Positions 5,816-63,934 of a stretch of DNA of 64,000 bases are shown here, piece by piece. Source of the stretch: Mytilus californianus (taxonomy: Eukaryota). The stretch lies in contig NW_026262668.1 in assembly GCF_021869535.1 (NCBI RefSeq), forward strand, positions 6,076,001 to 6,140,000, given 5' to 3'. The translations under genes were made by a program, and so were the position numbers. Within the stretch, counting starts at the first letter, position 1. Every line of letters starts with the position of its first letter. The notes under the pieces were generated by a model, which did not search any database, had not been told where the DNA came from, and worked only from the letters and a program-made list of their open reading frames with translations.

Positions 5816-6843
5816 TGGGGAGATATTGGTTGCAAAAATTTGATATTTCTTCATTTAAATGCAATATTTTTTATTTATTCAAATGGTATAATTTGTCATC
5901 CAAATGCAATATTTTTTATTCAATTGGTATAACTTGTCATTTTAATGCAATATTTTTTATTATATTTGTCGTTTTAACTGTAATTTGCAATGTTTAGTAG
6001 TTTTTTTATTTATATGCAATAATTGCATTATGGGAAATTGTTTGACGGTCACAAGGTTAAATTTGCAACAACGCATTTTTCGCCAGTTTTAGTTTAGGTT
6101 CGTGTTGCACAGTTATGTAGTGGTCTGTGATGTTTTTTGTGGTCCGTTGTTTTTCTTTTCGTCTCTTTTGTTTGCCATGTCATTTTTTTTGTCTGTCTTT
6201 TTTTTTGTCTTTTGTTTCTTCTATTATAAGTTTGTTTTGATTAGAATAACAAACTTTTTATTTTCATTCTCCAAATATTGAGTCATGAATTTTATATGTT
6301 GTAGTAATACGAAGAACTTTAAAAAAACGTACAAGAGTTACTTATCAAGAAAACATCTAAAATCTAGAATCCACCAATCACAAACGTTGTTGCAAATTTG
6401 ACCTTGTGACGTCAAACAATTTCCCATAATGCAATTATTGCATATAAATAAAAAACTACTAAACATTGCAAATTAAAGTTAAAACGACAAATATACCAAT
6501 TGAATAAAAAATATTGCATTAAAATGACAAGTTATACCAATTGAATAAAAAAATGTTGCATTTGAATGACAAATTATACCATTTGAACGAAAAATATTGC
6601 ATTTAAATGAAAAAATATACCATTTGAATAAAAAGTATTGCATTTGAATGACAAATTATACCATTTGAATAAAAAATATGGCATTTAAATGAAAAAAATA
6701 TACCATTTAAAGAAAAAAAATATTGCATTTAAATGAAGAAATATATCAATTAAATAAAAAATATTGCATTTAAATGAAAAAATACACCATTTAAAAAAAA
6801 ATATTGCATTTAAATGAAAAACATCAAATTTTTGCAATCAATA
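5816..6843. mobile_element. Foldback-type element with long modular inverted arms
   Basis: Left arm about 5824-6073 is the reverse complement of right arm about 6386-6843. The arms are built of ~32-45-bp tandem units (ATACCATTTGAATAAAAAATATTGCATTTAAATG), with more units on the right. Confidence 0.8.
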
Positions 6844-7129
6844 CCAACCATGCCATAACCCCCCCCCCCCCTTTTTTTACTTGCACTTTTTTTTTAATTC
6901 AGACTGTAAAATGATTAAACAGACTAGATTTCGTTAGCTTTCCCATTTCCCGTATATTTTATGCGACAATTCGTTACTTATAAAGATATTATTCGCTCGT
7001 ATATACGTGTAATATATTATTGATTATGTCAAAATCACGTGATTCGCTACCGTGGAGTTGATCAGTACGTCGAAAAAACGTCACTCAGTCATTTTGAAAT
7101 TCAAACTATAGTAACACATTTCTAAGGCT

Positions 7130-7246
7130 GAGGGGGGTGACACACTTTTGGGATTTGGGATATAGGGGGTAAAAAAAAGTGGGATCTGGGAAAAAGAAGG
7201 AAATAAAAGAACGAAATGGGATATGACCATAATGTGGGATGTGGGA

Positions 7247-7281
<35 letters not shown>

Positions 7282-9240
7282 AAAAAAGAAACAAAATGGT
7301 GAAAATGCATGAATGGTCATGATGTGTCTGATTGGTGGTGTCCCCAGTCATGGAGTCGAATACAGCATATTATATATAGATCTACATTTTTGAATTTGCT
7401 GTTTCGTTCTCTTCAGTATGTACAGAACTTATGAAAAAACCCACATCTTTGCCATAGTTCACGAATCCAGGTTCTTACTACGAACGCCCTGAAGGATTGG
7501 TGCCTTTTAAGGCAGTTGTGAAAATGCCAATAATCAAAGAAATCAAAATCCCTCAAGCGCATATTTACGCTTTGCAGATATTTCTTCCTATAATTATCCA
7601 AGGGTGTTCTATCTGATATAACACTCTTGGATAATTATAGGAAGAAATATCTGAAAAGCGTAAAATAACTCTCTATTAGACAACAGAACACCAAATTTAA
7701 AGCAGGAACACTTCCATTGTATGCATATCTGAAAGAGACACAAAGTGTTGATACAATTGACTTTGAAAAATTGTTGATTGATGAAAAAGAAATTGGTGAA
7801 CAATCATCTAATATAATGTTTCCAACTGGAACATTGTTACTTCTGTCTGTTGAAGTGTGGAATCTAATCAACAAAAACGAAAGAAGGATATGCGACTTAA
7901 TCATATTCAATACCACTATAGAAACACCTGTTGGATCGGACGATGTACGTGGGGATATGTTTGTAAATTCTCCAGGAAACCCCTTTATTTGTAAAACTAT
8001 TAACTGTATGACAATTGGCATAGACCACGTGGTGAAGGAACTATATCTGAATTCAGTATATCTGAACTTCTTTACGAGGAACTTATTGGAAAACCCCAGG
8101 ACAAAAACAGCAGTGGAGACGAACAGGTTGAAAACATCAACGCAGTTATGGGGATAACACAGTCTTCCGGGACACGACAAAGACGGACACCAAGTTATTT
8201 AAAAGACTATTTTGCTTTAAAAAATAATCAATGATCATCAATCAATGCTTTTTTAAAATTTATTATTAGCCCTTTCAGATCACTTTATATATTAATTATC
8301 TTGTCCCGGAAGGTTGTTATATCTCCATATTTGTGTTGCTGTCTTCATCGTGTTTGAATTTACTGCTTTTTTTTGTACAGGGGTTTTCCAATAAAAGTCA
8401 ATAAGTTCCTCGTAAAGAATTTTAGAAAAACTAACAGTGTTTCAATTTAATTCACATTAAGCTTCGCATTCAGAGATAGTTCTTTCACCACATGGTCTAT
8501 GCCAATTGTCATACAGTAAATAAAGTGTTACAAACAGAGGGTATTCCTGGAGAATTCACAAACTTCGTCCGATTTAAAAGGTGTTTGTTCCATGGTTTTG
8601 CATATATTTAGAGGCCATTTTCTATGTTTTTTATTGTTGATTAAATTCCATACTTCAACAGACAGTAGTATCAACCTACCAATTGGAATCATTATTGGTC
8701 ATGCTTGTACACCAGTAATTTTGTTCATCAATTAACAATTGTTCATCAATTGTATCACACTTTGTGTCTGATATGAAGATCCCCTGCTTTGGGTTTTGTG
8801 TTCTGTTGGTTTTGTGTTCAGATAAGTTTTGTGTTCTGTTAACTAAACGGGAGTTGCTTTAAGCATTGGAGGCATTTATTTTCATAGTCATCCAGGAGTG
8901 CTTTATCACCTTTGGTGGTTTTTTTCCTATTATTTCTTTTCACAAAAGCCTTAAATGACATTGTTTCTTGAGGTTGTAGTAAGAATCTGGACCAGTAAAG
9001 TATAGGTAAGGCAAATATGTGTTTATTCATAAGTTCTGTACATACTGAAGAACAAACAAGACAAGAAGACAACTCTAGGTTGCTCCAAATAGGGCATTAT
9101 GGAAAACCAAAATCTGGGATTTGGGAGAATTGGAAAAAAAAGTGGGAAGTGGGAAAAGTGGTCTAAAAAATTTAGGAAGTGGGAAAAATTTCCCCAAAAA
9201 AGAAGGATTTGGGAAATGAGCATCCCTGTGTCACCCCCTC
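7130..9240. mobile_element. 2.1-kb TIR element, superfamily unresolved
   Basis: TIRs GAGGGGG(G)TGACAC and GTGTCACCCCCTC. 6-bp TSD AAGGCT at 7124-7129 and 9241-9246. TGGGA-rich subterminal blocks at both ends. Confidence 0.8.
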
Positions 9241-9879: not shown

Positions 9880-11575
9880 ACGACAGATTTGTACAGGATC
9901 ATCACTAGAAACTCTCAATAAATGTTTTTGTGGATTTATTTTTTATTGATAAGTGAATAAAGTAAATCATCAATTATATTAGTATGATCAGATGCAACTG
10001 GGTGCGAATCACAAATTCGCAATGCATTCTTCAGATGCTAGTTGTGACCTCTATTTCAGTGACTGACTTGGCTAGGGAGAATTTTTCAATGTCCTTTTTT
10101 TAATGACAAATCCCACATCAAATACATAGCTTTGGATCCATCCAATCATTTCATAATAGACAATTAATGGGGAGAATACGACATCAAAAATGTCCAACCC
10201 TTACACTTTAACGATAAAATATACATGCCCCACGTCAGGAACCGTTACATTAGTGCATTTTACACTTATTCTATGTTTTTTAGCCAACAACATAAGTTTC
10301 TATTCTACACCCCCTTTCAAAAATCCTGGATCCGCCCCTGGAATATTTTATTTTGAAAATATTTTCATTTCTTGGCAGGGCTGGTGACCGTTGTTTTTTT
10401 TTTTGCTCAAGACAGGTGTTGTAGTACTAGCTGGCTCCTTCCCATGATTTGTAAAACAAATATTTAATACAAAAACACATGGAATCATTACACAAGACAC
10501 TTTTAGAGCCATTACTATTAAGCATACGCTCGGTTGTACAAAAAATCTGGCCTTTCGAGTCAACTACAGATACAACACGTTTGACTGACTGTTGCCGATA
10601 TTGGTCATTAACATCTATTCTACTATAAGTATAAAGGGAAGAAATACTCTACGGTATCGTAAATTGGTCTGAAAAACTAAATAACACCCGCATAATATAT
10701 ATCTAAAGTACAATAGTGAATCTTGTAGTAACAATAAGCGTTAAGGACGAAACTGTCTGTAGTTTGTATAGCTGCAACCACAGGAGCTTGTTACCGAAAA
10801 AAATGATACATATTTGTTAAGTAAAGGTATAAAGGTATCAAATTATTTTTCAGTAACAAGTGCCCGTGACTGTGACCCTACCATCAAAATGAAAAAAAGT
10901 TATATTGGTGTGGGATATATGTGTGAATGAGACAACAGAACGGCAAACAACCAAAGGGTGTCATCCGGGTTTGCCCTCTTTTAATTACATGCATATATAA
11001 ACATGAGGGGAATTGTTAACAATTAAAGTCAGTTTCTTAAATTTAGGCATATTATTTTCCTGTAAAATCTTAAAAAGCATACATATTTTATGTTGAAAGT
11101 TGATTCGATATTGAGATTTAAAAAGGAAAAATATTATAACAAAAACTATAAATATAATTAAAAAAGAGATGAATGCTATAAGAACATTAATATTGAGATT
11201 TAAAAAGGACAAAATATTATAATAAAACTATAACTATAATTAAAAAAGAGATAAATGTCATAAGAATTTTAAATGAGATTATAAAATAAAAAAAAAATAT
11301 ATGTACAAACTAATAACAAACAAAAAATGTACTCATATTTCTATCTATTCATCTAAGATATTATAATTGAATTAATTTTTCAATCCAAATATTTAATAAT
11401 TATGTGAACAGTATTCCGCATCCAAGCTAGGATGTCAATGATGATGATTGGTTTTAGAGTCCTTTTTGATATTGCGGACTCATATTAGTAAGTTACAGAT
11501 TTGGACCTGCCTGTCTTTTTGCTTTCATTTTGCTCCGAATGCGATGTTGTAGCTGGTACGGAGTATTTAGCCGTT

Positions 11576-12166
11576 CTAACAGCATGACAGCTTCTCTTTG
11601 GGTTGAAGGTTCAAGGGCAACCGATGCGGTGGTGTGGTTAGAAGGTCATGGTCGTCGATGTCAAACCCTTCATCAAAGTCGATACTACTACGCTTGCCTC
11701 TTTCAGTTGTCGACGTGTAGTAAATAAGGCGATGACATGCCTTCTTGGGATTGTACGGACTGGTGACAATATCCTTGTTGATGACAGCTCTCACTGGTTG
11801 ACCTCTGTACTTAGTTGGTGTGAGTAGTTTACCAACTACTGTGTCACTAGCTTCTGTCTGACTGTTGTACATGTAGTCTACCCTGGCCTCGGTGTTTTGT
11901 TGTTGTACAGCAGCGGGAACAACTGTTGTTTTTGTGTCCATCCACAGGGCGAAACGGTTAGCGTTGCGTCTCCTGGTAGATAGTGGCTTGTTCTTCTTTT
12001 TCAGTGCCGGCTCAGGTTTCCTAGATGAGGTGTCCGGTTCCTTAGCCTTGATCCAAGTGAGTTGTACAGAGACCTGGTCAGAGCTGGCGGTGAATTTCCA
12101 TTCCAACTCTTTTCCATCCGACTTCATAGTTACAAGTAAGGCTTTCAATTCATTTGATAGTTCCAT
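11576..12166 (-). CDS. Unknown protein, unit A (196 aa from ATG 12166; original C-terminus appears frameshifted)
   Basis: ORF MELSNELKALLVTMK... is 49/72 identical to the unit B N-terminus. A downstream frame, LERLNTPYQLQHRIRSKMKAKR, is homologous to the unit B C-terminus. Confidence 0.65.
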   Translation of the reverse strand: MELSNELKALLVTMKSDGKELEWKFTASSDQVSVQLTWIKAKEPDTSSRKPEPALKKKNKPLSTRRRNANRFALWMDTKTTVVPAAVQQQNTEARVDYMYNSQTEASDTVVGKLLTPTKYRGQPVRAVINKDIVTSPYNPKKACHRLIYYTSTTERGKRSSIDFDEGFDIDDHDLLTTPPHRLPLNLQPKEKLSCC

Positions 12167-12777
12167 AATGATTGTCCACGAAGTGATCGATTCTAAGTCC
12201 AACTCACGAATAGGATGTCAACTACTCAAGTTATGCTTTTGTAGAAAGTTCTCTTAGCTTAGACAAGCTTATTATCATCTGTTTGAACACTTCTCACACT
12301 TTCGTTAGTAATATAAATAGACAGGTCGGTCAAATTCAAGCCATTCTAGCCATTCTAAACCGTCATCCTTGTGAACAATTATTATGGAAATACCGAATGA
12401 TTTGACCCGTTCCTTAGCCTTGATCCAAGTGAGTTGTACAGAGACCTGGTCAGAGCTGGCGGTGAATTTCCATTCCGACTCTTTTCCATCCGACTTCATA
12501 GTTACAAGTAAGGCTTTCAAATCATTTGATAGTTCCATAATGATTGTCCACGAAGTGATCGATTCTAAGTCCAACTCACGAATAGGATGTCAACTACTCA
12601 AGTTATGCTTTTGTAGAAAGTTCTCTTAGCTTAGCCAAGCTTATTATCATCTGTTTGAACACTTCTCACACTTTCATTAGTAATATAAATAGACAGGTCG
12701 GTCGAATTCAAGTCATTCTAGCCATTCTAAACCGTCATCCTTGTGAACAATTATTATGGAAATACCGAATGATTTGA
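12037..12777. repeat. 372-bp tandem duplication covering the shared intergenic region and both ORF starts
   Basis: 12037-12405 is repeated at 12409-12777 with about 6 substitutions. The ORF-track ends at 12202 and 12574 are offset by 372. Confidence 0.9.
12684..12718 (+). promoter_or_regulatory. Candidate TATA + Inr core promoter
   Basis: TATAAATA at 12684-12691 and TCATTC at 12713-12718, placing A+1 31 nt after the TATA T. The upstream duplicate is at 12312/12343. Confidence 0.45.
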
Positions 12778-13440
12778 AAGCGCTTTTAGCCAACATGAAG
12801 TTAGAAGGAAAAGAACATGAGTTGAAATTTACTGCCAGTTCTAACCAGGTTACAATCCAACTCACCTGGATCAATGCCAAGGACTCGGACACTACATCCA
12901 GGAACCCTAAGCCGGCCCTGCAAAGGAAACAGAAGCCTCCATCTACCCGGAGACGAAATGCCGAGCGTTTCACCCAGTAGATGGACTCTAAAAAAAGCCG
13001 TTGCTTCCGCTGCTTCCCCTGTACCTACCACCAGTACTAGCGTAGATAACATCTGTCAGACGCAAGCCAGGGATACAGTCATTGGTATACCACTAACACC
13101 AACAAAGTATTGTGGAGAACCAGAGGTAGTCAACACCAAGACGAACATTTTCACTAGTCCGTACAACTCCCACAAGGCATGCCATCGCCGTTACTTCTAC
13201 ACTCCATCCAAACCTAGAAGTAAGCGTTGCAGGATAGATTTCACAGAGGGATTTGAAAGCGATGGGCCCGACCTACTTCGCACACCATCCCGTACTTCTC
13301 CAATATCCTTGCCAGATCCAGAGGCCATTCAAACTGCCTTTACCTTACAAGAACGGCCAGACACTCCGTACCAACCTCAACCACCAGGTTGGTGCAAGAT
13401 GAAAGGGAAAAGAACAGCAGATTCAACACTGCAAGAATAG
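12756..13440 (+). pseudogene. Unknown protein, unit B (paralogue of unit A, disrupted)
   Basis: MEIPNDLKALLANMK...RFTQ* has TAG at 12978 where unit A has Trp, then a +1 shift in an A-run. The next frame shares LTPTKY, TSPYN, KACHR and IDFxEGF with unit A. Confidence 0.7.
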
Positions 13441-13522
13441 GTTATTGTAGTCCGCAATATCTATCAAGATAGCCGGACGATAAAATCCAACATCAATCAA
13501 TTCAAGCCATTCAAATAAAGTA

Positions 13523-13730
13523 CTGTGGATTCATTTATTTTCGTGGGAACCATTTTTCGTGGATTGAGGAAAACTTGCACTTTCGTGGATATTTGATTTC
13601 GTGGTTTTGCCAAAATCTGCATACATTCTTATAGAAAATTAGTAATTAGTTGTACATTGGAATTCGTGGTTCCCGGGTAACCACGAAATCAACGAAAATT
13701 GGTATCTAGCGAATAATAATGAATCCACAG
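13523..13730. mobile_element. Tc1/mariner-type MITE (TA TSD)
   Basis: TA|CTGTGGATTCATT...AATGAATCCACAG|TA. Related copies at 41089-41312 and about 48980-49180. Confidence 0.85.
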
Positions 13731-13731
13731 T

Positions 13732-14934
13732 ATGGCAAATGCACAACTTCAACCACTTCAGTATATACAGAACAGAGATAGTTTAGTATTAGGAGGTCAC
13801 CGTTATAGTTTTAAGAATAGACGCAACAATAACAGAATCGACTGGAGATGCACTGTTTCAACATGTCCAGCAACAGTCAACACACATGAGGGTCACCCGA
13901 TTAAATTCAGTCCACCACACAACCACCAAGCTAACTCAACCGAGGTATCCAAAATCCTACAAACAATGAAACAAAGAGCCAAGACAGAGGTCACACCTAT
14001 TCCAAAACTATACGAGGAGGAGCTTGTCAAACTCTGTAACCCAGATTGGACAGACGACATCAAATAGATTGTAGAACAACTACCAACATATTACTCTGTT
14101 AAGACGTCATGTACCATCAAAGATCTCTAAATATACCCGTACTACCAAAGACAACAGCAGACACCAATCTTCAAGAAAAATGGTGCCATTTCACTAAAGG
14201 AGATCAGTTTCTTCTACCCTCTGACAACATCAACCCACCAATGCTTATATTCTCAACTACAGACAACCTTAGACACGTTGCTTCTGCTGACACTATCTTC
14301 TGTGATGGAACCTTCTACACATGCCCAACTCTGTTCCACCAGCTTTACACAATCCACGCAATGGTTGATGGTGCAATGTACAACACTGGCATACAGCTTA
14401 TTACCAGGAAAAGATACTGACAACTACATAAGATTATTCAGTCATCTCCAGTATATATCTCAACAGCACCAACAACATCTTCAACCCAGTACCATATTCA
14501 TCGAATATGAAACAGCTACGAACAATGCAGCTCGTGTCGTCTTCCCTGGTGTTCAAGTCAAAGGTTGCTTTTTCCACTTTACCCAATGTATTTGGCAAAA
14601 GACTCAGAAATGTGGACTGCAGACTTACTACAAACAAAACGACGACATCACAAAGCTTGTTCGACGGGCAGCAGTCTTACTATTAGTACCCTAGGACCAA
14701 CTTGAAGATGATTTGCTCGACACGTTAGAAGAAATAGCTGAAGCAGAGAATGTTCCTGACACAACCACTTTTACAGATTACGTCACCGAATATTGGACTG
14801 AAGGACATCACTTCCTCTGGAACCACTACCTGACTGAGGGACCAAGCACTACCAACCACTTGGAAGGCTGGCACAGTAAAATCAAGAAGATTGTCCAACA
14901 AGCACACCCAAATATCTATGAGATAGAGTTTTGA
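13732..14934 (+). pseudogene. MULE (Mutator-like) transposase with N-terminal FLYWCH zinc finger, decayed
   Basis: YSFK...WRCTVSTCPA...HNH (FLYWCH), FCDGTF (first catalytic D), GCFFHFTQC (CxxH) and TTNHLEGWH (catalytic E). In-frame stop at 14065 plus frameshifts. Confidence 0.9.
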
Positions 14935-19300: not shown

Positions 19301-20874
19301 GACAATTGAGGCAACAATATTGATTAAAGAAATCTTCAAGATTTTCAAAATATTACCGACAAAAGCCTTCAGTTGGGCAATCTTACTGTAATCTAATTAT
19401 CTCTACTGATAAATAATGCAACACTAATGACACACTTAAGTTTTGGAATAATTTTATTCACAGAGACTGTTTTTCATTGTACATTTCTTTGCTCTTGTCT
19501 TTTCGGAGTTCAAATTTGGAATTACTAATTGCTGCATGAAAGAGACTAGTTCCACTTTTCTATGCATATGATCGTCATATGTACTTGAAAATCATTCCAT
19601 AAACATCCGTTTGATATCCGTTCAATGCCAGAAGCTGTCTATTACCCAGCTGAGAGCAGTCCTCAGCTAGTGGTTTTTCTGCCACAATTACAAGGGAAAA
19701 CTGGCTACAACTTGCACTGGATCAGGCACTTGAATCTTACATCGATCTTGATGTTAAACAGTTAGTTTAAAGGCCCCTCCGGAACTGTTAGATTTTATGA
19801 CAGTCTTCCTTCCATACAGAACATCGCTGCAAAATAATTTGACCATTCAATTAGGTAATTATATTTTAATAATATTATTTGGCAATCCAAAGAGAACCTG
19901 AAAATATTAGACCAATGTTTGAACAGAGAAATGCCCCCAAAAACAGCCATTTTGCTAGACAATGAAATTTAAAAACCAGATAGATGCATGTGTCCCATAA
20001 TCTTTTGTTTCAGTTAAAAGTAAATGTAGATCAGATCATTGGCTCTAACCAAAATTTTAAACCGGTGTTTTGAATTCCAGTATTGTGATTGCCAAATTTA
20101 GCTGCCCCCTGAAAATCAAATGGTTGTTACCCCCCCCCCCCCCCCCCTAATTTGTTCAAGGTATGGTGGTTTGACCCCTTTTCGGCTTTCAGTACATCAT
20201 ATTGTATATCTTTAATGAAAATTGCATAAACTAGATGAATTTCTAGTAATTTTCTACGATATTATTTATCATTTGAAAAAATACCATGCATCTGATTTAA
20301 ATTGTTTCCTATTTGAAAAAGCGCGCCTTCTTTAACTTTAATTTACCTCCCTTTATTTCACGTAGCAACGCAAATAAAAAACTGCCATTCTTTGCTGCAT
20401 ATCAATTTTTTTCCCCGATAAAAATATATATCATGCAACATAATCAAATTTACAAATTGGGAGACAATCAAGGTGTTCCAACCGTTGGATAGTATTAAAA
20501 AAAATAATGAAAGGATGGCATGATTACAAGTTTGAACCCTGACGACACTGAAAATCGAAGATTCACGCATTTACCTATCATATGAAGATACGATGAGGTG
20601 ATAAACTTAACAATTAATAATTTACCTGATTCATTATCATATTCACAGTATGTTGACACGTCTTAGTTCGTCTGTGCTAGCTCATTTCAAACAAGCAAAA
20701 CAATTACAGCACCATCCGTTTTTCTTTACCGATCGCCTCTAGTCAGGAGAGCGCACTGTTTACAGGGGAGGTAATATTTTGTCACCAGTTCGTGCACTGA
20801 ATAAGGCTTCACATTAGTGACGTCATCTTGTTATAGAAATGAGAAAGCAGTTTGACATTAGTTAGATTGGCTAT

Positions 20875-22270
20875 AAACACAAGAATATCAGAGGATGTTT
20901 TTCATCAATTAAAATGGCTTTAGATACAAGAATATAAGAGGGTGTTTTTTATCTGTTAGAATGGCTTCATATGCAAGAGTATCAGAGGGTGTTTTTCATC
21001 AGCCAGAATGGCTTTAGATACAAGATTATCAGAAGGTGTTTTTCATCAGTAAGAATGGCTTAAGATACAAGAGTATCACCGAATGTTTTCATAAGTAAGA
21101 ATGGCTTTAGACACAAGAGTATCAGGGGATGTTTTTTATAAGTTAGATTGGCTTTAGATACAAGAGTATCAGAGGGTGTTTTTTATAAGTTAGAATGGCT
21201 TTAGATGCAATAGTATCAGAGGGTGTTTTTTCATAAATTAGAATGGCTTTAGAAACAAGAGTATCAGAGGGTATTTTTCATCACTCAGAATTGCTTTAGT
21301 TACAAGAGTATCAGAGGGTGTTTTCATAAGTTAGAATGGCTTTAGATGCAAGAGTATCAGCGGGTGTTTTTATAAGTTAGAATGATTTTAGATGAAATGT
21401 ATCATAGGATGTTTTCCATAAGTTAGTATGGCTTTAGATACAAGAGTATCAGAGGATGTTTTATAAGGTATATAGCTTTAGATGCTAGAGTATCAGTGGG
21501 TGTTTTTCATAAGTTAGAATAGCTTTAAATACAAAAGTATCAGTGGGTGTTTTTCATAAATTAGAATGGCTTTAGATACAAGAGTATCAGAGGGTGTTTT
21601 TGTTAAGTTTGAATGCCTTTAGATACAAGAGTATCAGAGGGTGTTTTTGTTAAGTTTGAATGCCTTTCGATACAAGAGTATCAAAGGGTGTTTTTCATAA
21701 GTTAGTATGGCTTTAGATACATGAGGATTAGAGGATGATTTCCTCGGTGAGAATGGCTTTAGATACAAGAGGATTAGAGGATGATTTCTTCGATGAGAAT
21801 AGCTTTAGATACAAGAGGATTAGAGGATGATTTCTTCGGTGAGAATAGCTTAAGATACAAGAGGATTAGAGGATGATTTCCTCGGTAAGAATAGCTTTAG
21901 ATACAAGAGGATTAGAGGATGATTTCCTCGGTGAGAATAGCTTTAGATACAAGAGGATTAGAGGATGATTTCCTCGGTGAGAATAGCTTTAGATACAAGA
22001 GGATTAGAGGATGATTTCCTCGGTGAGAATAGCTTTAGATACAAGAGGATTAGAGGATGATTTCCTCGGTGAGAATAGCTTTAGATACAAGAGGATTAGA
22101 GGATGATTTCCTCGGTGAGAATAGCTTTAGATACAAGAGGATTAGAGGATGATTTCCTCGGTGATAATAGCTTTAGATACAAGAGGATTAGAGGATGATT
22201 TCCTCGGTGAGAATAGCTTTAGATACAAGAGGATTAGAGGATGATTTCCTCGGTGAGAATAGCTTAAGAT
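20875..22270. repeat. 46-47-bp minisatellite, about 30 copies in two sub-arrays
   Basis: Diverged AGATACAAGAGTATCAGAGGGTGTTTTTCATAAGTTAGAATGGCTTT units run to about 21715, followed by near-identical AGATACAAGAGGATTAGAGGATGATTTCCTCGGTGAGAATAGCTTT units with period 46. Remnants at 22420-22555. Confidence 0.95.
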
Positions 22271-29800: not shown

Positions 29801-32800
29801 CAATCTTTACTAAAGAGATAACAATGAAATCAAATTGGCAAATGTATTTCATATGACGACTAAGCGATAAACACAAGCTGTTATTCTTTTTTATTATTAT
29901 TGTTTTACAAAAGAATGCAAATATGATTAATGAAATGTGCATAAATAAATTTGCACTTTTCAAACATCTAAGCTGTAATATGAAATGATTTGTTGAACTC
30001 GCCTGGCTTTTTAGAGCCTTTGAATTCATTAAAAAACAAACACTTTATCAATTTTGAAAAAAAAATTTATTTCAAATTTGTATTTCACTTTTGCCCATGT
30101 TTACTTAGTGACAGTAAGTGGACGTTTAATGTGCAATGTTCAAAAGTATGTTATCTTGTACAGAGAAACTCAATAAAAAAACCTTGGAATGTTATGCAAA
30201 ATTTAGGAAAATACCATGTGCCTTGTAAATGTACGGTTTACGGCCTGTTCGGTCACCTTTTAGTTCTGACATTAAGATTTTTTACAGATCTAAATGAACA
30301 CCGACGAAGGAATTATTATATGCTATTTAACGGTGAAAAACTGCATCACAATTGAAATTAGAATAAAAAGTGGAAAATTTATACTCACACTAACTTAAGA
30401 ACCATAAATGTGTTCAGTCAAATATGTTGACAAACACAAGATATGTAGGTTTCCAATATATGTCTAGACTTTAAGCTATGTCCTATGTTTTGAATTTTCA
30501 TGACCAAATAAGTAGTTTTATGCATTATGAAACAACTATGAAACTATCAGATCAATAGTGAAAGCAGCCAAAAAACTTTACTCGCATTTGGTTGTGTAGA
30601 TCGGTACTTTTATAAACGTCAACTGGTGGCAGGGAAACAGTAACAGTAGCATAATGCTTCATCGTCACATTAATGTTTTTAATTGGGTTGAGCCTTATTT
30701 GTTTCCCTCATTATTTTAAATGATGTATTAACTAATAAAATTCATTCAACGTTATGATATCTATTGTTTTATTTTTTATCATGTATTTGTATAAGCATTT
30801 GTAAAGTAGAGCTGGCTGTTAAAAACCATTTGATAACGCTTGAAGTTGAGGTGTCAGATTAGGTCAGCGTCAAAAATACTTTTTTTCAAAGTTGAACACC
30901 TCATAATCATCAGAATATATTTGAAATATTTGATCTTGGAGATCCTTATTCTTATAAAAATATAACAATTTGTTTTTTGCATTTGTAGCATGTGGCCTCG
31001 TTGTCTGATCAATACTTTTTGAGTTGAGCCATAATTTCACAGAGTTATCACAAGCGCTAATTTTCCTCTATACCTTTTCTGTGAATTCAAAAATGTTTGA
31101 CATTTTGCCAAGCATCATGTTTTTGTACAAATGATTTGATATCTGAACTTGAGGTTCAAAGTGTGGATTTTTACAAATTCGAATAATTTTCAAAAAATCT
31201 CCGAAAGATTTTGGAATGTATCGACACATCACGCGCATGAAATATTTATCTGTACCTTTGTCAAGATATGATGACAGCATTCGTTCTCGTGGCTCTCTAA
31301 CAAATACTGCCTTTGCCAATGCACTATTGAGCATCATTCCTTTGATGTCCTTAGCATCAAAATACGCTAAGGGAATAAGTCCGCTTCTCCGAGGATCGGG
31401 TGCATTTTTTTTTGTGATTCCCTGTAGAATCTGAAACAGTCTTTTCCAAAAGGTGCCACCTGACTTGGAGGTCATGAAAAATATTAAATTAAACTTTGGT
31501 AAAACAAACGGTAAGGTAAAAATGTTAGATTTTATTTTCCTTATGTCGTCGTCTGACATCTCAATAACACCTCGTTCAGGATTAAATCAATTATTCCATC
31601 TTTGTGATGTCGTATAATGATGAAATTTTTTCTCTCGGTAGAGCCTGATTTTTCGCTATTCCAACAACAAGTACGTATATTTGCTAATAAAATTAAGAAA
31701 CTGATAACAACAAGTATAAAAAATATCTGCATCCGTCTGAAACACATTAGTTTATCTAGTAAGTAATGGTAAAATTGGTGTAAATTCACTAATATAATCA
31801 AATTGTCATCATATTTTGAAGACTTCTGCATTGGTGAGATACCAGGTGAATAGTAAAATGTATCTCTTTTGACTATATGTCATACAAATATTAATAAACC
31901 ATAGTTGCTATTTACTCTTTTTTTTAACAATACGGCATGGTACATGATAATCGGTTATTAATTGTTGATTTGAATCTAAATCAGGTATGTGTATCTAAAT
32001 TCAAATCAATGTTGAGAATTATCATAAAAAAAGTATTGAATTGTATTATTGTCAAATTATAAGTAGAAGAGTAAAACTGGATGATAAATGTCGAACAGGA
32101 ATGGAGTTGATCTCTTCTTTTACATTTTCATCTCTATAAGAGATAGAGAGAGAGATTAGAAAATATTCTCTACTATTTTTTTATCGATAAAATAAAAAAA
32201 AAACGCATATTGCAAAACTGACTGTTTTACACACGTGGGCAGCAATGACGGTTTTCTAGGTCTTTTTGATTTCATGTCGTACATTAAAAAATGTATAAAT
32301 CATCGTTTTACCTGTATCAGATTGATATTTCACTGACAAAATCAAGCAATGGAGTGGTTCGTACTAGTGGATTCTTTGTTTACATTTTCAATGCTGTCAT
32401 TCTTTTATTTTCAATAACTTAAACATGCGCAACCCAACTTCATCTACTTTAAAGGTCAAATTAAAAGGTTGCATGAATACGGATTCAAATTAGTTGAATT
32501 ATTGACTTAAAGGTCAAGAACACACCAATGATGAATTTAGCTCATTTTGACAAAATCGAACAAAACTGACTGCTAATAACGAATTATTGTTCCTTTATTC
32601 CGCTTTTAAAAATGTTTGAAACCAAAAAAAAAAAAAAAAAAACCTTGTTAATAAATATTCCGTATCAACTTCACAAATAATACATGATGGTCTTGAAGTA
32701 TAGATAAACTTTTTTTGATTCGAGCGTCACTGATGCGTCTTTTGTAGAAGAAACGCGCGTCTGGTGCAAATACAAAACTTCAATCCTGGTATCTATGATG

Positions 32801-38800: not shown

Positions 38801-41800
38801 AAAGCTTTTGCCAAATACAACTAAGACACACCATAGAAATGTGTAAAAAAAATTGAAGTTTATTGTTTGCCACACGCTAAGTAACAAAGATTACTTCATG
38901 TGGAATTTCATTATTCTAGTTAATATTTACTCAAATGAACAAACATGTTTAATGCTATGACATATTTTCCAGCCATCAATGTAAAATAATAAAACGAGTA
39001 GGAAACAGTGTTTTCAATTTTTAATGTATATCTTAATCTTATTATGCCGAATAAATAAATGTATTCGTGTTTTTTTTTTTCATGTTTATTGTGGAGTTGT
39101 AAATACATTTTATTAAATTCCGAAGAACTTTAGAACTCTGGAAGTCACGATACATACTGAAATATTGAAATTTCACCCCTTAATCATCGTAAAATGCAGG
39201 AATCCCGCGTGTATCGTTCGCTTTTAACCTATTTTCTCTCTAAAGGCAGACTTTTTCCTATTTTTTATCAACATAATTCTGATCAAATAATTTTACAACA
39301 GATTGAAAGATTTATTTTTTCATATTGTGGTACTTTGGACAACAGTATGAGCTGTTATGATTGGCTTTTTATTTTGTAGAAAAGCATGATTGTAGTTAAT
39401 AATGACAATAAACTTCCTTATATTTGTAAAAATAAATAATTATATATGGATAGAAGAGAATAAGAATTTAAAATTTTAAAATGATATTTAGATGTTCAGT
39501 AAATTTTATAACTTTACAGGAATTTCTGAGTGCATTTAAGTTTTGGATTTTCAAATATTTTGATCCATTTGTGTTACAGACACACATTTCGTTATTCTAT
39601 TAAGTTGTTTTGCGTACTGTCCTAAATTATTTTAGTTATTCGTTGTTATTCTGTGGTTAACACAATTAATGTACTATTATATTATTTATTTATGTATTTA
39701 TCTGTCTTTAGTGTTTTTGCATTTATTTGTACTCTGTTCCCGTCATGTAATGTTGTCATTTTAGCGGTATATTTAACATTGCCATAAAGCGCGGAGGTTT
39801 GGCTAGCCACAAAACCAGGTTCAACCCACCATTTTTTCTTAAAATGTCCTGTACCAAGTCAGGAATATGGCAGTTGTTATCTAAAAGTTCGTTTCTATGA
39901 ATGTTGCATTGATGTTTGTTTTTTGTTCAACTTCTGTGTTCTGTTATTTCGTTGTTTTCCTCTTATAGTTGATGTGTTTCCCTCGGTTTTAGTTTGTAAC
40001 CCGGATTTGTTTTCTCTCAATCGATTTATGACATTTTAATAGCGGTATACTACTGTTGCCTTTATTTGACACCCAGGTGAAGAAATCTTAATGGTCGTAG
40101 TGCATTCTGGTGCAATAAATTCCTTTTATATATGATGAGGGTTTTTTTTTGTGCCGTTAAATAATTTAAAGTGACATAATATGCTTGAAGTCACGCCATT
40201 AGTTAGAGGAAATAATTAAAATTAAAATTTACCAGTGTTCCACAGTAAAAAAAAAGTTGCAATTGAGAAGTGAAAAATGCACATTAGAAATAAAAGAAGA
40301 CAAGAAATTGAGCTTTATACTGAATTAAGATACAGCAAAACGATCGTTTTTATAATTACTTACCCTTTTTTCTTTCTGTTTACATAATAAAACATTTTAA
40401 AAGATTATTTGAAGTACGTCTATAATATTCCATTACAGCTTGTTCAATCAAAAGAAGGCCTTGACTACACATCTGTTGAGGAGATACGTAAAGGAACGAT
40501 GCATGAATTTAAGCAACGAGAGCAGTTAATTGACATGTTTAAGAAGCTGTTAAAATGTCTCCTTGGATTTACTTTTCTACGAGTTATTTACAGGTATCTC
40601 TTTAAATCTTTTTTACTTTTAGATCACTTTTCATCAATTATTTTCATCTAATGGCTTAAAAATGAAAACAACACGTTATAAATTTCATGCGTCTGAAGCG
40701 CGTTTCTGGATTTACCGTCGTCAGGAACGATCAATAACGAATATTTAAAAGGCTAGGATGTATAAGAATCGAAAGAGTTGAAGAGCGATATGATCAAAGT
40801 AACCTTAAAACAAAAATAAAAATCCATCTACGGTCAACTTTTCCGTAGGGAATTGAGACCTTAGTTTCATTATAATTTCAAAATTTATAAAAGGATAATT
40901 TTAGAAAGGTTTGTTATAAATCATGTCAGTACCGAAGTACCGACTACTGAGCAGATGATACCCTCGGAGACTGATACTCCACCAGCAGAGGTATCGACCC
41001 ATTGCTGTAAAAAATGAAAACAACACGTTATGAATTGCATACGTCCGAAGCTGTGTCTACCTTCATCAGGAACGCTCAAACCCAAATACTGTAGATTCTT
41101 TATTTTTCGTGGGATACCAATTTTTGTAGATTTCGTGGGTACAAGTGAACCACAAGTGAACCACGAATTTTAATGTTCATCGAAGTAAAAATTGTCTATA
41201 GGCTTGTATGCAGACTTTGCCAAATCCACGAAATCAGATACTAGTAGTCACAAAAATACAATTTTTCCTTTAACCACGAAAATGATACCAACGAAAATAA
41301 ATGAATCCACAGTATTTGAAGGCCAAAGATGTATAAGAACCGAAGTGTCAAATATCAAAATATCAAATTCACTTTGTCAATATGTGATCAAAGTTCCAGG
41401 TTCCTGATTTTCTTGTTGACATTTATCTGAGCATGATATACGTACGTAACAGAATGCGTAATCCTCGCCGTTTCGTTAGAACAAAGATTCCAGATTGAAC
41501 CAATTTGAAGGGATTGTTCTCATGCTATTCACATCATTTATTCTTTATAATGATCACAGAAATCACTTTATTCGTCTGTATGTCCAAAAGAAAGGATTTT
41601 GGATAGCAACTTGATTTTTTGAAAGGTTTCGTAACTCCTGACCAAATTTCTTACTGAGGAAGCCCCTAAAAAGGTTTTTTTTCTGTAATTTAGTGCCCTG
41701 GAAAAATATTCCTCCTTTTAATCATTTTAAACATACATGAAATTGATTTTTAAAAAAGGAAGGAGAATCCAACTATAAAACTATGTATTTATTCAGATTT

Positions 41801-47800: not shown

Positions 47801-50800
47801 AGACAATTTGTAAACGTTTTCCAATCCAACAGGGTTATCGGGGTTAAACTCTGCATTTTTAGTACTTTCCATATTTCAATAAAACCTGGCTCAATTAACG
47901 CGATTTTATTATTCGTAGATTGATGAAATATATCTTTTAAATAGAAAAATGTATATTGGAATTCGAAATCTACGCTTAGAAACCATGTAAAACATTGTGT
48001 CCAATATGTTAATTTTTCAAATTAACCTTTTAGAGCTTCATATTTTTCCTGATAGAACTCAAATTAAGTATTAAATCATTGGTTCAATACAGTCTCGCAT
48101 TACAAGATTTTTGTATTATATTGCTTGAGTGTCAAATATGATAACATTATGTATCAATTGAAAACTTGTTTAGTAACATCTTGTATACAAATTGTTGAAA
48201 AAAACTAAACATTTAAAAACAACTCATCGACTTGTGTTATCTTTCGTATCTTTAATAAATATTTTTTTTAATATAACCATTAGAGTAAAAAACAGGAATC
48301 TGATGTTCAGTAGTTGTCGTTTGTTGATGTGGTTCATAAGTGTTTCTCGTTTCTCGTTTTTTATATTTTTATATAGATTAGACCGTTGGTTTTCCCGTTT
48401 GAATGGTTTTACACTAGTAATTTTTGGGGCCTTTTATAGCTTGCTGTTCGGTGTGAGCCAAGACTCCGTGTTGAAGACCGTACTTTGACCTATAATGGTT
48501 TACTTTTATAAATTTTTACTTGGATGGAGATTTGTCTCATTGGCACTCATACCACATCTTCTTATATCTATTTATTTTAAATTTGGCATCATATTAACAT
48601 ATTCTCATCCTGATAATCATATATACCAGCAGAAATAATGTATAATCGGGAGACAATTTTGACGAAGTAGAATTCTGTCTGTAATTGAAAGGCGTACATT
48701 AATAACGTTGCAGTTTTCTTTCTGATTTGCTTCTTATACATGGAGTTCTGTGTTTAAGAACATTTTGGTTCTGAGATAATATATGAATACCTTATTTGAA
48801 AAAAATACACCTATTTCAACTCTTTACTTTGTCGATTAATAACTTCAGATGTCAAATACTTGTTTCTTCATCGAAAAAGGACAAATTTAATTAGCAAATG
48901 ATATAATAAGAAAAAGCCCAGTTAGGGCCTTCCAGAAAAGTGGAAGAAAATAAGATTTTGTCATAGAATTTCAAGCTTACTATGGATTCATTATCATTCG
49001 TGGGATACTAGTTTTCGTGGAATTCATGGGTATTCGTTAACCACGACTTTAATGTTTAACAAATTACAAATGTTCTATAGGCTTGTATAAAGACTTTGGC
49101 AAAACTATGAATTCAAATATCCACTGATTAAAAGTACTATCCACGAAAATTGGTACAGATGAAAATAAAAGAATCCACAATGTTGAATTTTAAATACTGA
49201 TGTCAACCTTATATTCAGTACATTGATATATATATATTCCTTGCTTGGTATAACAATCGCAATTTTGAAAGTATTTTTATGAATTTAAACAGGAAAAGAA
49301 AATACTAATCGTTGTGAATTTTATGCCGCGTGTCATAATAAAAGCTTTGCTTAATTTTAATTAAAGGCTTGTGTACAAAGGTCATGATATCAGCGTGATT
49401 CAATTATTAATTCATTGCAGGAAAACATCATATTGTGGTACGAGTTTTCGGCAAGGGCTTCATGTCCAATATTGTGAGGATGTTCATTAAAAGTTTTGAT
49501 GCAAAGCACGAAATTGATGAAGTCAGTACTAACTATGGTAAGTTTATCTTTAAGAATAAAACTTGAATATGTAATTTCATCCAATTGTGTCCTATAATCT
49601 GGCGTGAGATTTCTGACAGTAGGATAGGCATGGGGCATGATACATGCAAGTCAAAAGACTGTCAACTGTCGACGCATCTGACCTTTCTCCGTTTGATATC
49701 AATGCTATTCCCTCACGGTTGTTTTTCGACATTTAGAAAGAGTGTGGCTTTGCATGGTGAGAGTTGCATGTATATCAAGAGAAGCTTATCATGTTGACTG
49801 ACCTGGTCTGGCTTCTTTTGGAGTTTGATTGTTACATTGATGAGTCTCTTCTAAATTGGTTTACGAGAGTTCAACATCGGTAAACTATTGTCGTCTTAAT
49901 TTGAACATCGGTAAACTATTGTCATCTTGATTTGAACATCGGTAAACTATTGCCGTCTTAATTTGAACATCGGTAGACTATTGTCGTCTTAATTTGAACA
50001 TCGGTAAACTATTGTCGTCTTAAATTGAACATCGGTAAACTATTGTCGTCTTAATTTAAGCATCGGTAAACTATTGTCGTCTTAATTTGAACATCGGTAA
50101 ACTATTGTCGTCTTATTTTGAACATCGGTAAACTATTGTCGTCTTAATTTGAACATCGGTAAACTACTGCCAATTCTTATTTGACACTTAACGTGAACTG
50201 CTAGTCGTCCACAGTGCAACCGGAGTCTTAAGTTAGAGGCACTGAATATGTGATAGCAAAGTCTTCAATTTACAAAATTTGTTAACGATATTAGGGTTGA
50301 AGTGCATGTTAGCAAATTTTTCATCTTATAATAATCGTGTCAACATTATAAATCAGGGAAACAGGTTAAAGACCCGTTTGTTCGACAGAACAGTTAAGTA
50401 TAACAAGGTTTCTGAAATCACTCATTATCTGTATGATATTTGGTTATGTAGCTCATCTGTAAGGATCATGTGCTCTTTTCACATCTCATGGCGTCCGTCG
50501 TCGTCGTTGTCTGTCGTAGTCCGACTCAGACCGTTGAATTTTACAAAAACATTTCTCTGAAATTACTAAGCCAATTGGCAAAATTTGTTGACAATCATCC
50601 TTACCCATTGTGTAGCATCACCACCGTATATAGGTACACTCGAAGCGGTGGAAAAAAAAGTAAGGTTGAATTCTTATTTTATAAGAACTCTTAATTATAT
50701 TCTACGTATTGCTGACAAGTAAAGATTTGTGATACTGATTCCTAATACTAGTAATGTAGCTACAATTTAGGGCTAATATGATCCTTAATTGGCTTTCTCT

Positions 50801-62842: not shown

Positions 62843-62932
62843 CAGTCTTTGTGGTGTACCGTGCCAGGACGAATTCTAAAGAAAGGTACAGTGAAATTTT
62901 ATTTGATAATCTTAATTATTATATTCTCAAAA

Positions 62933-63934
62933 ATGGCTGAACAAGAATTTAATGTAGGGTTAGTTTTTCAAAATTTAGCAACACAAGTTCAAAGTCTTAC
63001 TCAAAAATTAACTGCAAACGGTGTCAATTCGATAGTTGAAGGCTTTGATGGTTCAAATTCAGAAAAATATTCTCAATGGATTCGATCCATAGAAAAATAT
63101 GCAATGATTACCAATTTAAATCCGAACGATTGTAAAATGGTATGTTATCAAACTTCTGTAGGGCCAGTAAGTGATTTCATTGCTAGGTGGTTAAGAGAAA
63201 CAGATGCCGGAAATAACAGTTGGGATAATCTAAAAACTCAATTGAATTTTCGTTATGGGCATATTCCTGATGCATCATATGCATTTGAACTTCTGAATAA
63301 GGTTCATCAGAAAGTTGGCGAAAATGTTCCCATATTTGGAGAACGAATTTTAACTTTAGCAACAGATGCTTTTAGAGGGCAAGATATCAACCAACCAATT
63401 GTTCAACTTCAATTAGTTAACTTTTTCATAAACGGGTTGTATCAAGATTATTTGAGAATGAACATAATGCGTGAAAATCCACAAACTTTGGCTCAAGCAG
63501 TAAACTCGGCAATGGCTGAAACGCAATTAAGACGAAAATTTGACTTGAAAAAAAGTAACGGTAATGAGCGTAATATTACACCAATGGACGTATCATATTA
63601 CCGAGAAATAGGTGTAAAATGTAACTATTGTAAGCGATTTGGCCATAAGGCAAAATATTGTAGGGATAATAATGCAAAATTTCATGTAAACACAGTAAGT
63701 TCGCGTGCCGAATAACATGTGCCCCGAAGGAATTTTAATGACAACACGCTAAGTAATAATGTAAATTCATATCCTCCTAGAAGGTTTAATTCTGTCCAAA
63801 ATAATCCTAACTTAACATGACAATCAAGAGGAACATTCTTCTGTTGGAATTGTGGTAAACCAGGTCATTATCAAAGAAATTGTAGAGCAAGACCAAATGA
63901 ACAATTCGGGAAACCAAGAGAAAATTTAAACTAA
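62933..63934 (+). pseudogene. gag: Ty3/Gypsy gag with two CCHC zinc knuckles, two in-frame stops
   Basis: MAEQEF...; CNYCKRFGHKAKYC and CWNCGKPGHYQRNC. TAA at 63713 and TGA at 63818 are in frame. The frame ends NLN* at a TTTAAAC slippery site. Confidence 0.88.

What the first reader, a model, noticed from the sequence alone, without database searches (positions are those of the whole stretch)
11428..13512. Head-to-head pair of paralogous small genes from a family I cannot place
Seen: two ~775-bp units (A 11439-12210 on minus, B 12719-13498 on plus) point away from a ~110-bp shared spacer. Their proteins are 49/72 identical at the N-terminus, with mostly conservative changes. They share later blocks (LTPTKY, TSPYN, KACHR, IDFxEGF), a basic KPxSTRRRNAxRF motif, the start context GTG(G/A)ACAAT(C/T)ATT-ATGGAA and the 3' motif AGTCCGCAATATC. 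Neither has a transposase, RT or recombinase motif. Inference: the protein was under purifying selection while the copies diverged and both copies are now damaged, as expected for a mobile, protein-coding but enzyme-less element or a bidirectional two-gene cassette that may be undescribed.
Basis: partly seen in the sequence, partly recalled or inferred. Interest (0 to 1): 0.85.

Follow-up and report, generated by a model that had tools for sequence, protein, structure and literature searches.

The report
Protein-coding parasitic retroelements in mussels
The two head-to-head genes are separate insertions of an apparently undescribed, enzyme-less jumping element of mussels that carries one unknown protein, borrows another element's copying machinery, and repeatedly lands at the start of a DNA transposon's transposase gene.

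Summary
The two paralogous units are real (49/72 identical, dN/dS 0.2-0.3), but they are not a two-gene cassette. Each is a separate ~780-bp insertion with its own target-site duplication (11 and 14 bp), a conserved 3' RNA hairpin and an (ATC)n-like tail, the marks of a non-autonomous non-LTR retroelement. Relatives occur singly or head-to-tail in Mytilus edulis, M. coruscus and M. galloprovincialis; A and B belong to two old subfamilies. Selection acts between subfamilies; within them it is not detectable. The main new result: in three of six Mytilus loci a unit sits 9-12 bp upstream of the ATG of a FLYWCH-MULE transposase, and in two of them its duplication straddles a predicted TATA-initiator start site. 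These are independent insertions. The protein has no Pfam, PDB or viral match. Its N-terminal domain also rides on poly(A)-tailed and zf-MYND elements with other tails. The partner LINE was not found (Nimb/I-like tail suspected), so descent from a LINE ORF1 is unproven. Verdict: new variant of the known class of ORF-bearing non-autonomous LINEs (HAL1, HeT-A, TRE5-A.2).

The parts
11428..11438 (-). 3' copy of unit A's 11-bp target-site duplication
   Evidence: exact repeat of 12211-12221
11439..12210 (-). Unit A: non-autonomous retroelement (44-nt leader, ORF, 3' hairpin remnant, (ATC)n tail)
   Evidence: 86-88% identical to solo copy L002
11439..11479 (-). Unit A 3' end: hairpin with internal deletion, then (ATC)n tail
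11493..12166 (-). Unit A ORF, 196 aa open (12166-11576), frameshifted near 11600-11630; C-terminal piece in another frame to 11493
12211..12221 (-). 5' copy of unit A's target-site duplication
12222..12332 (.). 111-bp host/MULE upstream spacer with TATAAA at 12312-12317 (predicted promoter of the MULE gene); not part of either unit
   Evidence: no match in other loci; promoter role inferred from spacing shared with L025
12333..12346 (+). 5' copy of unit B's 14-bp target-site duplication; contains the predicted initiator (A at 12343, 31 nt after the TATA T)
   Evidence: exact repeat of 13499-13512
12037..12780 (.). 372-bp tandem duplication (two copies, 6 differences) covering the 5' part of A, the spacer and the first codons of B
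12719..13498 (+). Unit B: non-autonomous retroelement of a second subfamily (37-nt leader, ORF, hairpin, tail)
   Evidence: 91% identical to solo copy L004
12756..13440 (+). Unit B ORF, broken: stop at codon 75 (12978-12980) and frameshift near 12985; remainder open to 13440
13450..13478 (+). Conserved 3' hairpin (10 bp, two pairs with compensatory changes across copies)
13479..13498 (+). TAAA motif and (ATCA)n microsatellite tail
13499..13512 (+). 3' copy of unit B's target-site duplication
13521..13732 (.). MITE with terminal inverted repeats, inserted at a TA next to the MULE start codon; further copies at about 41086-41317 and 48978-49179
13732..14920 (+). Broken FLYWCH + MULE transposase gene whose 5' leader is B's insertion target
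   Evidence: Pfam FLYWCH E 6.5e-9, MULE E 5e-12; homologous to L003 and L025

Best explanation
A and B are two independent copies of a family of ~750-800-nt non-autonomous non-LTR retroelements. Each carries one ~220-aa ORF, a 3' stem-loop and a microsatellite tail. [quoted passage not shown] Source copies keep the ORF under selection, probably because the basic protein binds the element's RNA and helps its transport or targeting; daughter copies decay. With only a 40-70-nt leader, the element appears to gain from landing at the start site of a promoter. It does so repeatedly at the start of a FLYWCH-MULE transposase gene, where it takes over the promoter and separates it from the transposase. 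In the window, B landed at that site, A landed 111 bp upstream on the other strand, and a 372-bp duplication and a MITE came on top. Shown: TSDs, hairpin, tails, multicopy state, selection pattern, repeated MULE-proximal insertion. Inferred: the partner LINE, the promoter, the role of the protein.
For: TSDs of 11-15 bp in fixed register (starting 17-23 nt after the hairpin, ending 37-67 nt before the ATG where no other element intervenes) in winA, winB, L001, L002, L003u2, L006 and L025; chance of a match of 11 or more is 0.011 per locus. Hairpin kept in copies whose proteins are only about 35% identical, with compensatory changes at 2 of 10 pairs. 28 homologues, most from Mytilus assemblies. 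Omega A vs B 0.33 (N-terminus 0.20, p 5e-7, dS about 0.9); A vs L002 0.76 and B vs L004 0.66 (N-terminus), neither different from neutral. Tree: A with L002 (99/97), B with L004 (100/99). MULE-proximal insertions in the window, L003 and L025: TSD pairs are identical within each locus but differ between loci, and the L003 and L025 units are 81% identical while their MULEs are 62% identical. The TATA-to-initiator spacing is 31 nt (window) and 30 nt (L025). Bivalve Meta and V SINEs, whose tails PMC11481361 traces partly to Nimb LINEs, end in a similar closing stem + TAAA + CAA/ATC repeat (PMC10294476 supplement 14).
Against: No autonomous LINE with this hairpin was found, so the partner is a guess from tail architecture. 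L004 and L005 show no clear TSD and L014 only 7 bp. L001, L002 and L004 are not next to a MULE, so targeting is a preference at most. The sample is six Mytilus loci, five reached through annotated proteins, which may favour expressed copies. No expression data. No terminal inverted repeats were found around the MULE gene, so its status as a DNA transposon rests on Pfam only.
Confidence: 0.8

Rival explanations
1. A bidirectional two-gene cassette that moves as one unit.
For: Head-to-head layout with long diverged inverted arms; a TATA box in the spacer.
Against: Separate TSDs for A and B; solo relatives of each; no head-to-head pair in any other locus; the spacer matches nothing in the other loci.
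Confidence: 0.04
2. The units are accessory or captured genes of a Mutator-type DNA transposon (like mudrB or Pack-MULE cargo) and move with it.
For: Adjacent to a MULE gene in 3 of 6 Mytilus loci.
Against: Each unit has its own TSD and retro-type tail; within-locus TSDs are identical although the MULEs are about 61% identical; unit and MULE divergences do not match; solo copies exist without a MULE; no TIRs found.
Confidence: 0.07
3. Processed pseudogenes of an ordinary host gene, or retro-copied viral mRNAs.
For: Intronless, TSD-flanked, decaying copies; motif-rich, disordered basic protein; TQT motifs in relatives.
Against: No poly(A) but a conserved hairpin-microsatellite tail; at least four subfamilies with dS about 0.5-1.8 and selection between them; no viral match by structure, PHROGs or IMG/VR.
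Confidence: 0.06
4. Same element as in the best explanation, but it is simply an internal-deletion derivative (ORF1 plus 3' end) of one bivalve LINE clade, and the MULE adjacency reflects tail-target microhomology, open chromatin or sampling, not targeting by the protein.
For: This is how HAL1, HeT-A, Ag-Sponge and TRE5-A.2 arise (PMC5786205; PMC3159450). The MULE leaders contain TCA/CATT motifs resembling the tail.
Against: The protein has no CCHC knuckle, RRM, esterase or any Pfam ORF1 domain. No homologue was seen as ORF1 of a LINE; the one candidate (L007) proved to be a separate TSD-flanked insertion. The same domain rides on three tail types.
Confidence: 0.35

Closest known systems
ORF1-present non-autonomous LINEs: HAL1 (L1 clade), HeT-A (Jockey), Ag-Sponge (CR1) (PMC5786205; PMC5753468)
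   Same: One protein-coding ORF, no RT or endonuclease, LINE-type 3' end, TSDs, selection on the ORF in source lineages.
   Different: The ORF is not recognisably a LINE ORF1 (no Pfam match) and no parent LINE was found; the unit is only about 780 nt with a 40-70-nt leader; the same domain occurs with hairpin, poly(A) and other tails.
TRE5-A / TRE5-A.2 of Dictyostelium (PMC3159450)
   Same: A non-autonomous ORF-only derivative moved in trans through a 3' module; integration at a fixed position relative to a promoter, with ORF1 binding transcription-factor subunits in vitro.
   Different: TRE5 targets tRNA genes (Pol III) almost exclusively; here the site is a predicted Pol II start of a MULE transposase and only about half of the sampled loci use it; no protein homology was found or tested.
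Tx1L of Xenopus, which inserts into the apparent DNA transposon Tx1D (PMC1950540)
   Same: A non-LTR element that uses a DNA transposon as its landing site.
   Different: Tx1L is autonomous with a sequence-specific endonuclease; here the element has no enzyme and the target sequences differ between loci.
Bivalve Meta/V SINEs with LINE-derived tails and LP-SINEs (PMC11481361, PMC4758252, PMC10294476)
   Same: Short, TSD-flanked, hairpin plus short-repeat tail; tails exchanged between families.
   Different: No tRNA head or conserved SINE core; encodes a protein under purifying selection; inner hairpin sequence differs from the listed tails.

Membership tests
Non-autonomous non-LTR retroelement (TPRT-mobilised) | Variable-length target-site duplications | tested here: met
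   11-15 bp in 7 of 10 insertions, in fixed register
Non-autonomous non-LTR retroelement (TPRT-mobilised) | 3' recognition structure with a microsatellite or poly(A) tail | tested here: met
   10-bp hairpin with covariation plus (ATC)n, (GAA)n or (CTAA)n tail
Non-autonomous non-LTR retroelement (TPRT-mobilised) | Dispersed copies, no RT or endonuclease, no LTRs or TIRs | tested here: met
Non-autonomous non-LTR retroelement (TPRT-mobilised) | An autonomous partner sharing the 3' end | tested here: inconclusive
   not found in the collections on hand or in the truncated bivalve LINE library
ORF1-present non-autonomous LINE (HAL1 / HeT-A / Ag-Sponge type) | Single ORF maintained by selection | tested here: met
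   omega 0.11-0.36 between subfamilies
ORF1-present non-autonomous LINE (HAL1 / HeT-A / Ag-Sponge type) | The ORF is homologous to ORF1 of an autonomous LINE | tested here: inconclusive
   No Pfam ORF1 domain; the apparent ORF1-ORF2 arrangement in L007 is a TSD-flanked insertion beside a Tx1-like ORF2; Repbase could not be searched
Nimb/I-clade dependent element | 3' end homologous to a Nimb LINE 3' UTR | tested here: inconclusive
   similar closing stem + TAAA + repeat in Meta/V SINE tails, inner hairpin different; no Nimb sequence on hand
Nimb/I-clade dependent element | ORF1 with CCHC zinc knuckles (own knowledge of I-group ORF1) | tested here: not met
   no such motif in alignments or Pfam
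tRNA-derived SINE | Pol III RNA-derived head, no ORF | tested here: not met
   No Rfam match; leader of 37-67 nt runs into a selected ORF
Mutator (MULE) accessory gene or Pack-MULE cargo | Lies inside TIRs and moves with the transposase | tested here: not met
   no TIRs found; own TSDs; solo copies
Penelope pLTR / retrozyme | Hammerhead ribozyme in tandem or inverted repeats | tested here: not met
   no Rfam match to E 5 in 11000-14000; the 372-bp repeat is a local duplication with an internal junction

The most novel reading that the evidence does not exclude
A widespread lineage of protein-coding, enzyme-less retroelements whose protein does not descend from the ORF1 of its partner LINE but is a free module that switches between LINE machineries (hairpin tail, poly(A) tail, a third tail with zf-MYND), and that steers insertion to the transcription start sites of other transposons, taking their promoters and disabling them.
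Probability: 0.25. Interest if true: 0.8.

Novelty: new variant of a known kind. Interest (0 to 1): 0.52.

Why it matters
Protein-coding non-autonomous LINE-like elements are known from only a few clades, always with a recognisable ORF1. This family has an unplaced protein, occurs with three tail types, and shows repeated insertion at the predicted start site of a DNA transposon gene. If that holds genome-wide it is a testable case of one transposon parasitising the promoter of another, and of promoter-directed non-LTR integration in animals. In practice, many Mytilus 'uncharacterised proteins' and chimeric gene models (for example P0026 named RRP36, P0029, P0033, P0037) are these elements and should be masked; they may inflate counts of lineage-specific or dispensable genes.

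Tried and rejected
Rfam, Pfam, PHROGs, PDB by sequence and Foldseek against PDB and BFVD gave nothing; the models are of low confidence (pLDDT 69 and 60, pTM 0.27 and 0.26). Pattern and protein scans of viral contigs and metagenomes were empty, although the protein look-up later reached JGI contigs with a variant hairpin. The genome-contig scan gave four bacterial matches with no tail or ORF where inspected, taken as chance. I first read L007 as 'this family is the ORF1 of a Tx1-like LINE' and withdrew it when a 13-bp TSD and a poly(A) tail were found round the ORF. Searches of the bivalve LINE library for the hairpin failed, but the file is cut and holds no Mytilus entries. Whole-ORF dN/dS values involving L004 are invalid (second piece read out of frame); only its N-terminal values are used. 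TQT (LC8-type) motifs are enriched in distant relatives (12 against 1.1 expected) but not in the Mytilus core group, so they are not claimed for A or B. Literature searches found no description of the family. Broken ORFs were searched as pieces; no mended or consensus sequence was built.

Full report
Observation. Both ORFs are broken (A: frameshift near 11600-11630; B: stop at codon 75 and frameshift near 12985).

Each unit is its own insertion. A is bounded by an exact 11-bp repeat (11428-11438, 12211-12221) and B by an exact 14-bp repeat (12333-12346, 13499-13512; the duplicated copy at 12705-12718 has one change). Just inside the 3' repeat lie a hairpin and an (ATC)n or (ATCA)n tail. The window is inferred to be from a Mytilus species: 28 homologues were found, most from M. 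edulis and M. coruscus assemblies, at 35-78% identity. Their loci show the same anatomy: L001, L002 and L004 are solo units, L003 has two head-to-tail, and none is head-to-head. TSDs of 11-15 bp in the same register were found in 7 of 10 insertions; the chance of a match of 11 or more in windows of that size is 0.011. The hairpin persists in relatives with only about 35% protein identity (L005, L006, L014), with compensatory changes at two of ten pairs and different microsatellites. By established knowledge this is the signature of target-primed reverse transcription by a LINE that recognises a 3' structure (stringent type; PMC3747384).

Selection. A against B gives omega 0.33 (N-terminus 0.20, dS about 0.9). 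Other between-subfamily pairs give 0.11-0.45. A against its nearest relative L002 gives 0.76 and B against L004 gives 0.66 (N-terminus), neither different from neutral, though with few changes to go on. A groups with L002 and B with L004. This is the pattern of selected source lineages shedding copies that decay. The cassette reading is therefore rejected and the enzyme-less mobile element reading accepted.

The landing site. Downstream of B lies a MITE (13521-13732) inserted at a TA, then a broken FLYWCH + MULE transposase gene starting at 13732. Without the MITE, B's TSD ends 9 nt before that ATG. The same gene family begins about 11-12 nt after the TSD of unit 2 in L003 (M. edulis assembly) and 11 nt after the TSD of a unit in L025 (M. 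galloprovincialis), a locus fetched for a different protein. The TSD pairs are identical within each locus and differ between loci. The three MULEs are 61-62% identical, while the L003 and L025 units are 81% identical, so these are independent insertions at the homologous position. In the window and L025 a TATAAA lies upstream, and an initiator-like A inside the TSD falls 31 and 30 nt after its first T, the usual TATA-to-start spacing (own knowledge). The inference is that the element lands at the start site, is read from the MULE promoter and pushes the transposase away. A lies 111 bp upstream on the opposite strand, which could be a divergent start site, but that is one case. L001, L002 and L004 have no MULE nearby, so this is a preference, seen in three of six Mytilus loci from a small and possibly biased sample. 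No TIRs were found round the MULE gene.

The protein. A profile search of 1.84 billion representatives returned 48 hits. The conserved part is an N-terminal helix-strand-strand module followed by a basic helix (AlphaFold2: H5-13, E19-27, E32-40, H62-80, pLDDT 69), then a disordered S/T/P-rich region and a second small three-strand module. No Pfam, PHROG, PDB or viral structural match was found. The N-terminal module also occurs in a zf-MYND subfamily (profile probability 98%) whose copies end in another tail type (L008, L024), and more weakly in a 274-aa subfamily (probability 90%) whose copies end in AATAAA and poly(A) with their own TSDs (L007, L025). The poly(A) type is nested in the 5' end of a hairpin-type unit in both L003 and L025. 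Longer hits inspected were gene-model chimeras with host or other domains, or repeat-protein noise. The likely role, by inference from the basic helix and by analogy with LINE ORF1 proteins, is binding the element's RNA and aiding transport or site choice.

The partner. L007 first looked like ORF1 + ORF2 of a Tx1-like LINE, but the ORF there is a separate TSD-flanked insertion, so descent from an ORF1 is not shown. The tail's closing stem, TAAA and short repeat resemble bivalve Meta and V SINE tails, some of which are traced to Nimb LINEs (PMC11481361); the inner hairpin differs, and no LINE with it was found.

Comparison. It works like HAL1, HeT-A, Ag-Sponge and TRE5-A.2, the ORF-bearing non-autonomous LINEs (PMC5786205; PMC5753468; PMC3159450), and its landing site recalls Tx1L in Tx1D (PMC1950540) and the promoter-relative targeting of TRE5-A. 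Membership of the ORF1-derived class is untested at its key point. I found no paper describing the family, but Repbase could not be searched and may hold it as an unclassified repeat.

Verdict. The head-to-head pair is two insertions into and beside one promoter region, not a cassette. The element family, its unplaced protein, its several tails and its recurrence at MULE start sites make it a new variant of a known kind. Interest 0.52; 0.8 if protein-guided promoter capture proves true (probability about 0.25).

Noticed in passing
L025 7866-8970; L003 about 7030-7961; L007 5822-6927: A distantly related 274-aa ORF element with AATAAA, poly(A) and its own TSD (13-18 bp) is nested in the 5' end of hairpin-type units in two loci and sits just upstream of a Tx1-like ORF2 fragment in a third.
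   Followed up: partly
L008 6001-7110; L024 778-2455: Relatives with a C-terminal zf-MYND finger end in a different tail with (AATAAG)n or (GATACAA)n repeats; both are followed by, and have upstream, an AAGATGG-like sequence that may be a short TSD or preferred target.
   Followed up: partly
P0028, P0043, P0046, P0048, P0050, P0055, P0057: Repeated TQT motifs of the dynein light chain (LC8) binding type, 12 observed against 1.1 expected; a T-P-x-K motif is conserved across much of the family. P0072 has a weak PAM2 match.
   Followed up: partly
window 13732-14920; L003 9509-10880; L025 9738-11140: Compact intronless FLYWCH-MULE genes with no visible terminal inverted repeats and AT-rich tandem repeats upstream (window 11108-11286; L025 7378-7551). 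The mobile unit they belong to is unclear.
   Followed up: partly
window 13521-13732, 41086-41317, 48978-49179; L025 11164-11992: A TA-flanked MITE family; one copy sits at the MULE start codon in the window and another just after the MULE stop in L025.
   Followed up: partly
L003 3627-6861: Penelope-like element with a GIY-YIG-like region ahead of a broken RT (recognised by eye; no Pfam hit for the first ORF) and long flanking repeats, directly upstream of the cluster.
   Followed up: no
window 62849-63715: Intact 288-aa gag-like ORF (Ty3 capsid, E 8e-7) with a CCHC knuckle, probably the start of an LTR retrotransposon running off the window.
   Followed up: partly
window 31068-31559 (minus): Sulfotransferase family exon (Pfam Sulfotransfer_2, E 5e-9).
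   Followed up: no
window 20856-22270, 49873-50166, 6489-6821: Minisatellite arrays with periods 46-47, 31 and 41 bp.
   Followed up: no
window 7564-8714: Nested inverted repeats (arms 7794-7951/8557-8714, 7998-8052/8468-8522, palindrome 7564-7664) around short ORFs of 146-181 aa; not examined.
   Followed up: no
L004 6411-7205: A palindromic ~800-bp MITE-like insertion splits the B-type unit and was annotated as an intron.
   Followed up: no
L006 6573-6790: The 3' hairpin, tail, TSD and flank are duplicated in tandem (112 bp).
   Followed up: no
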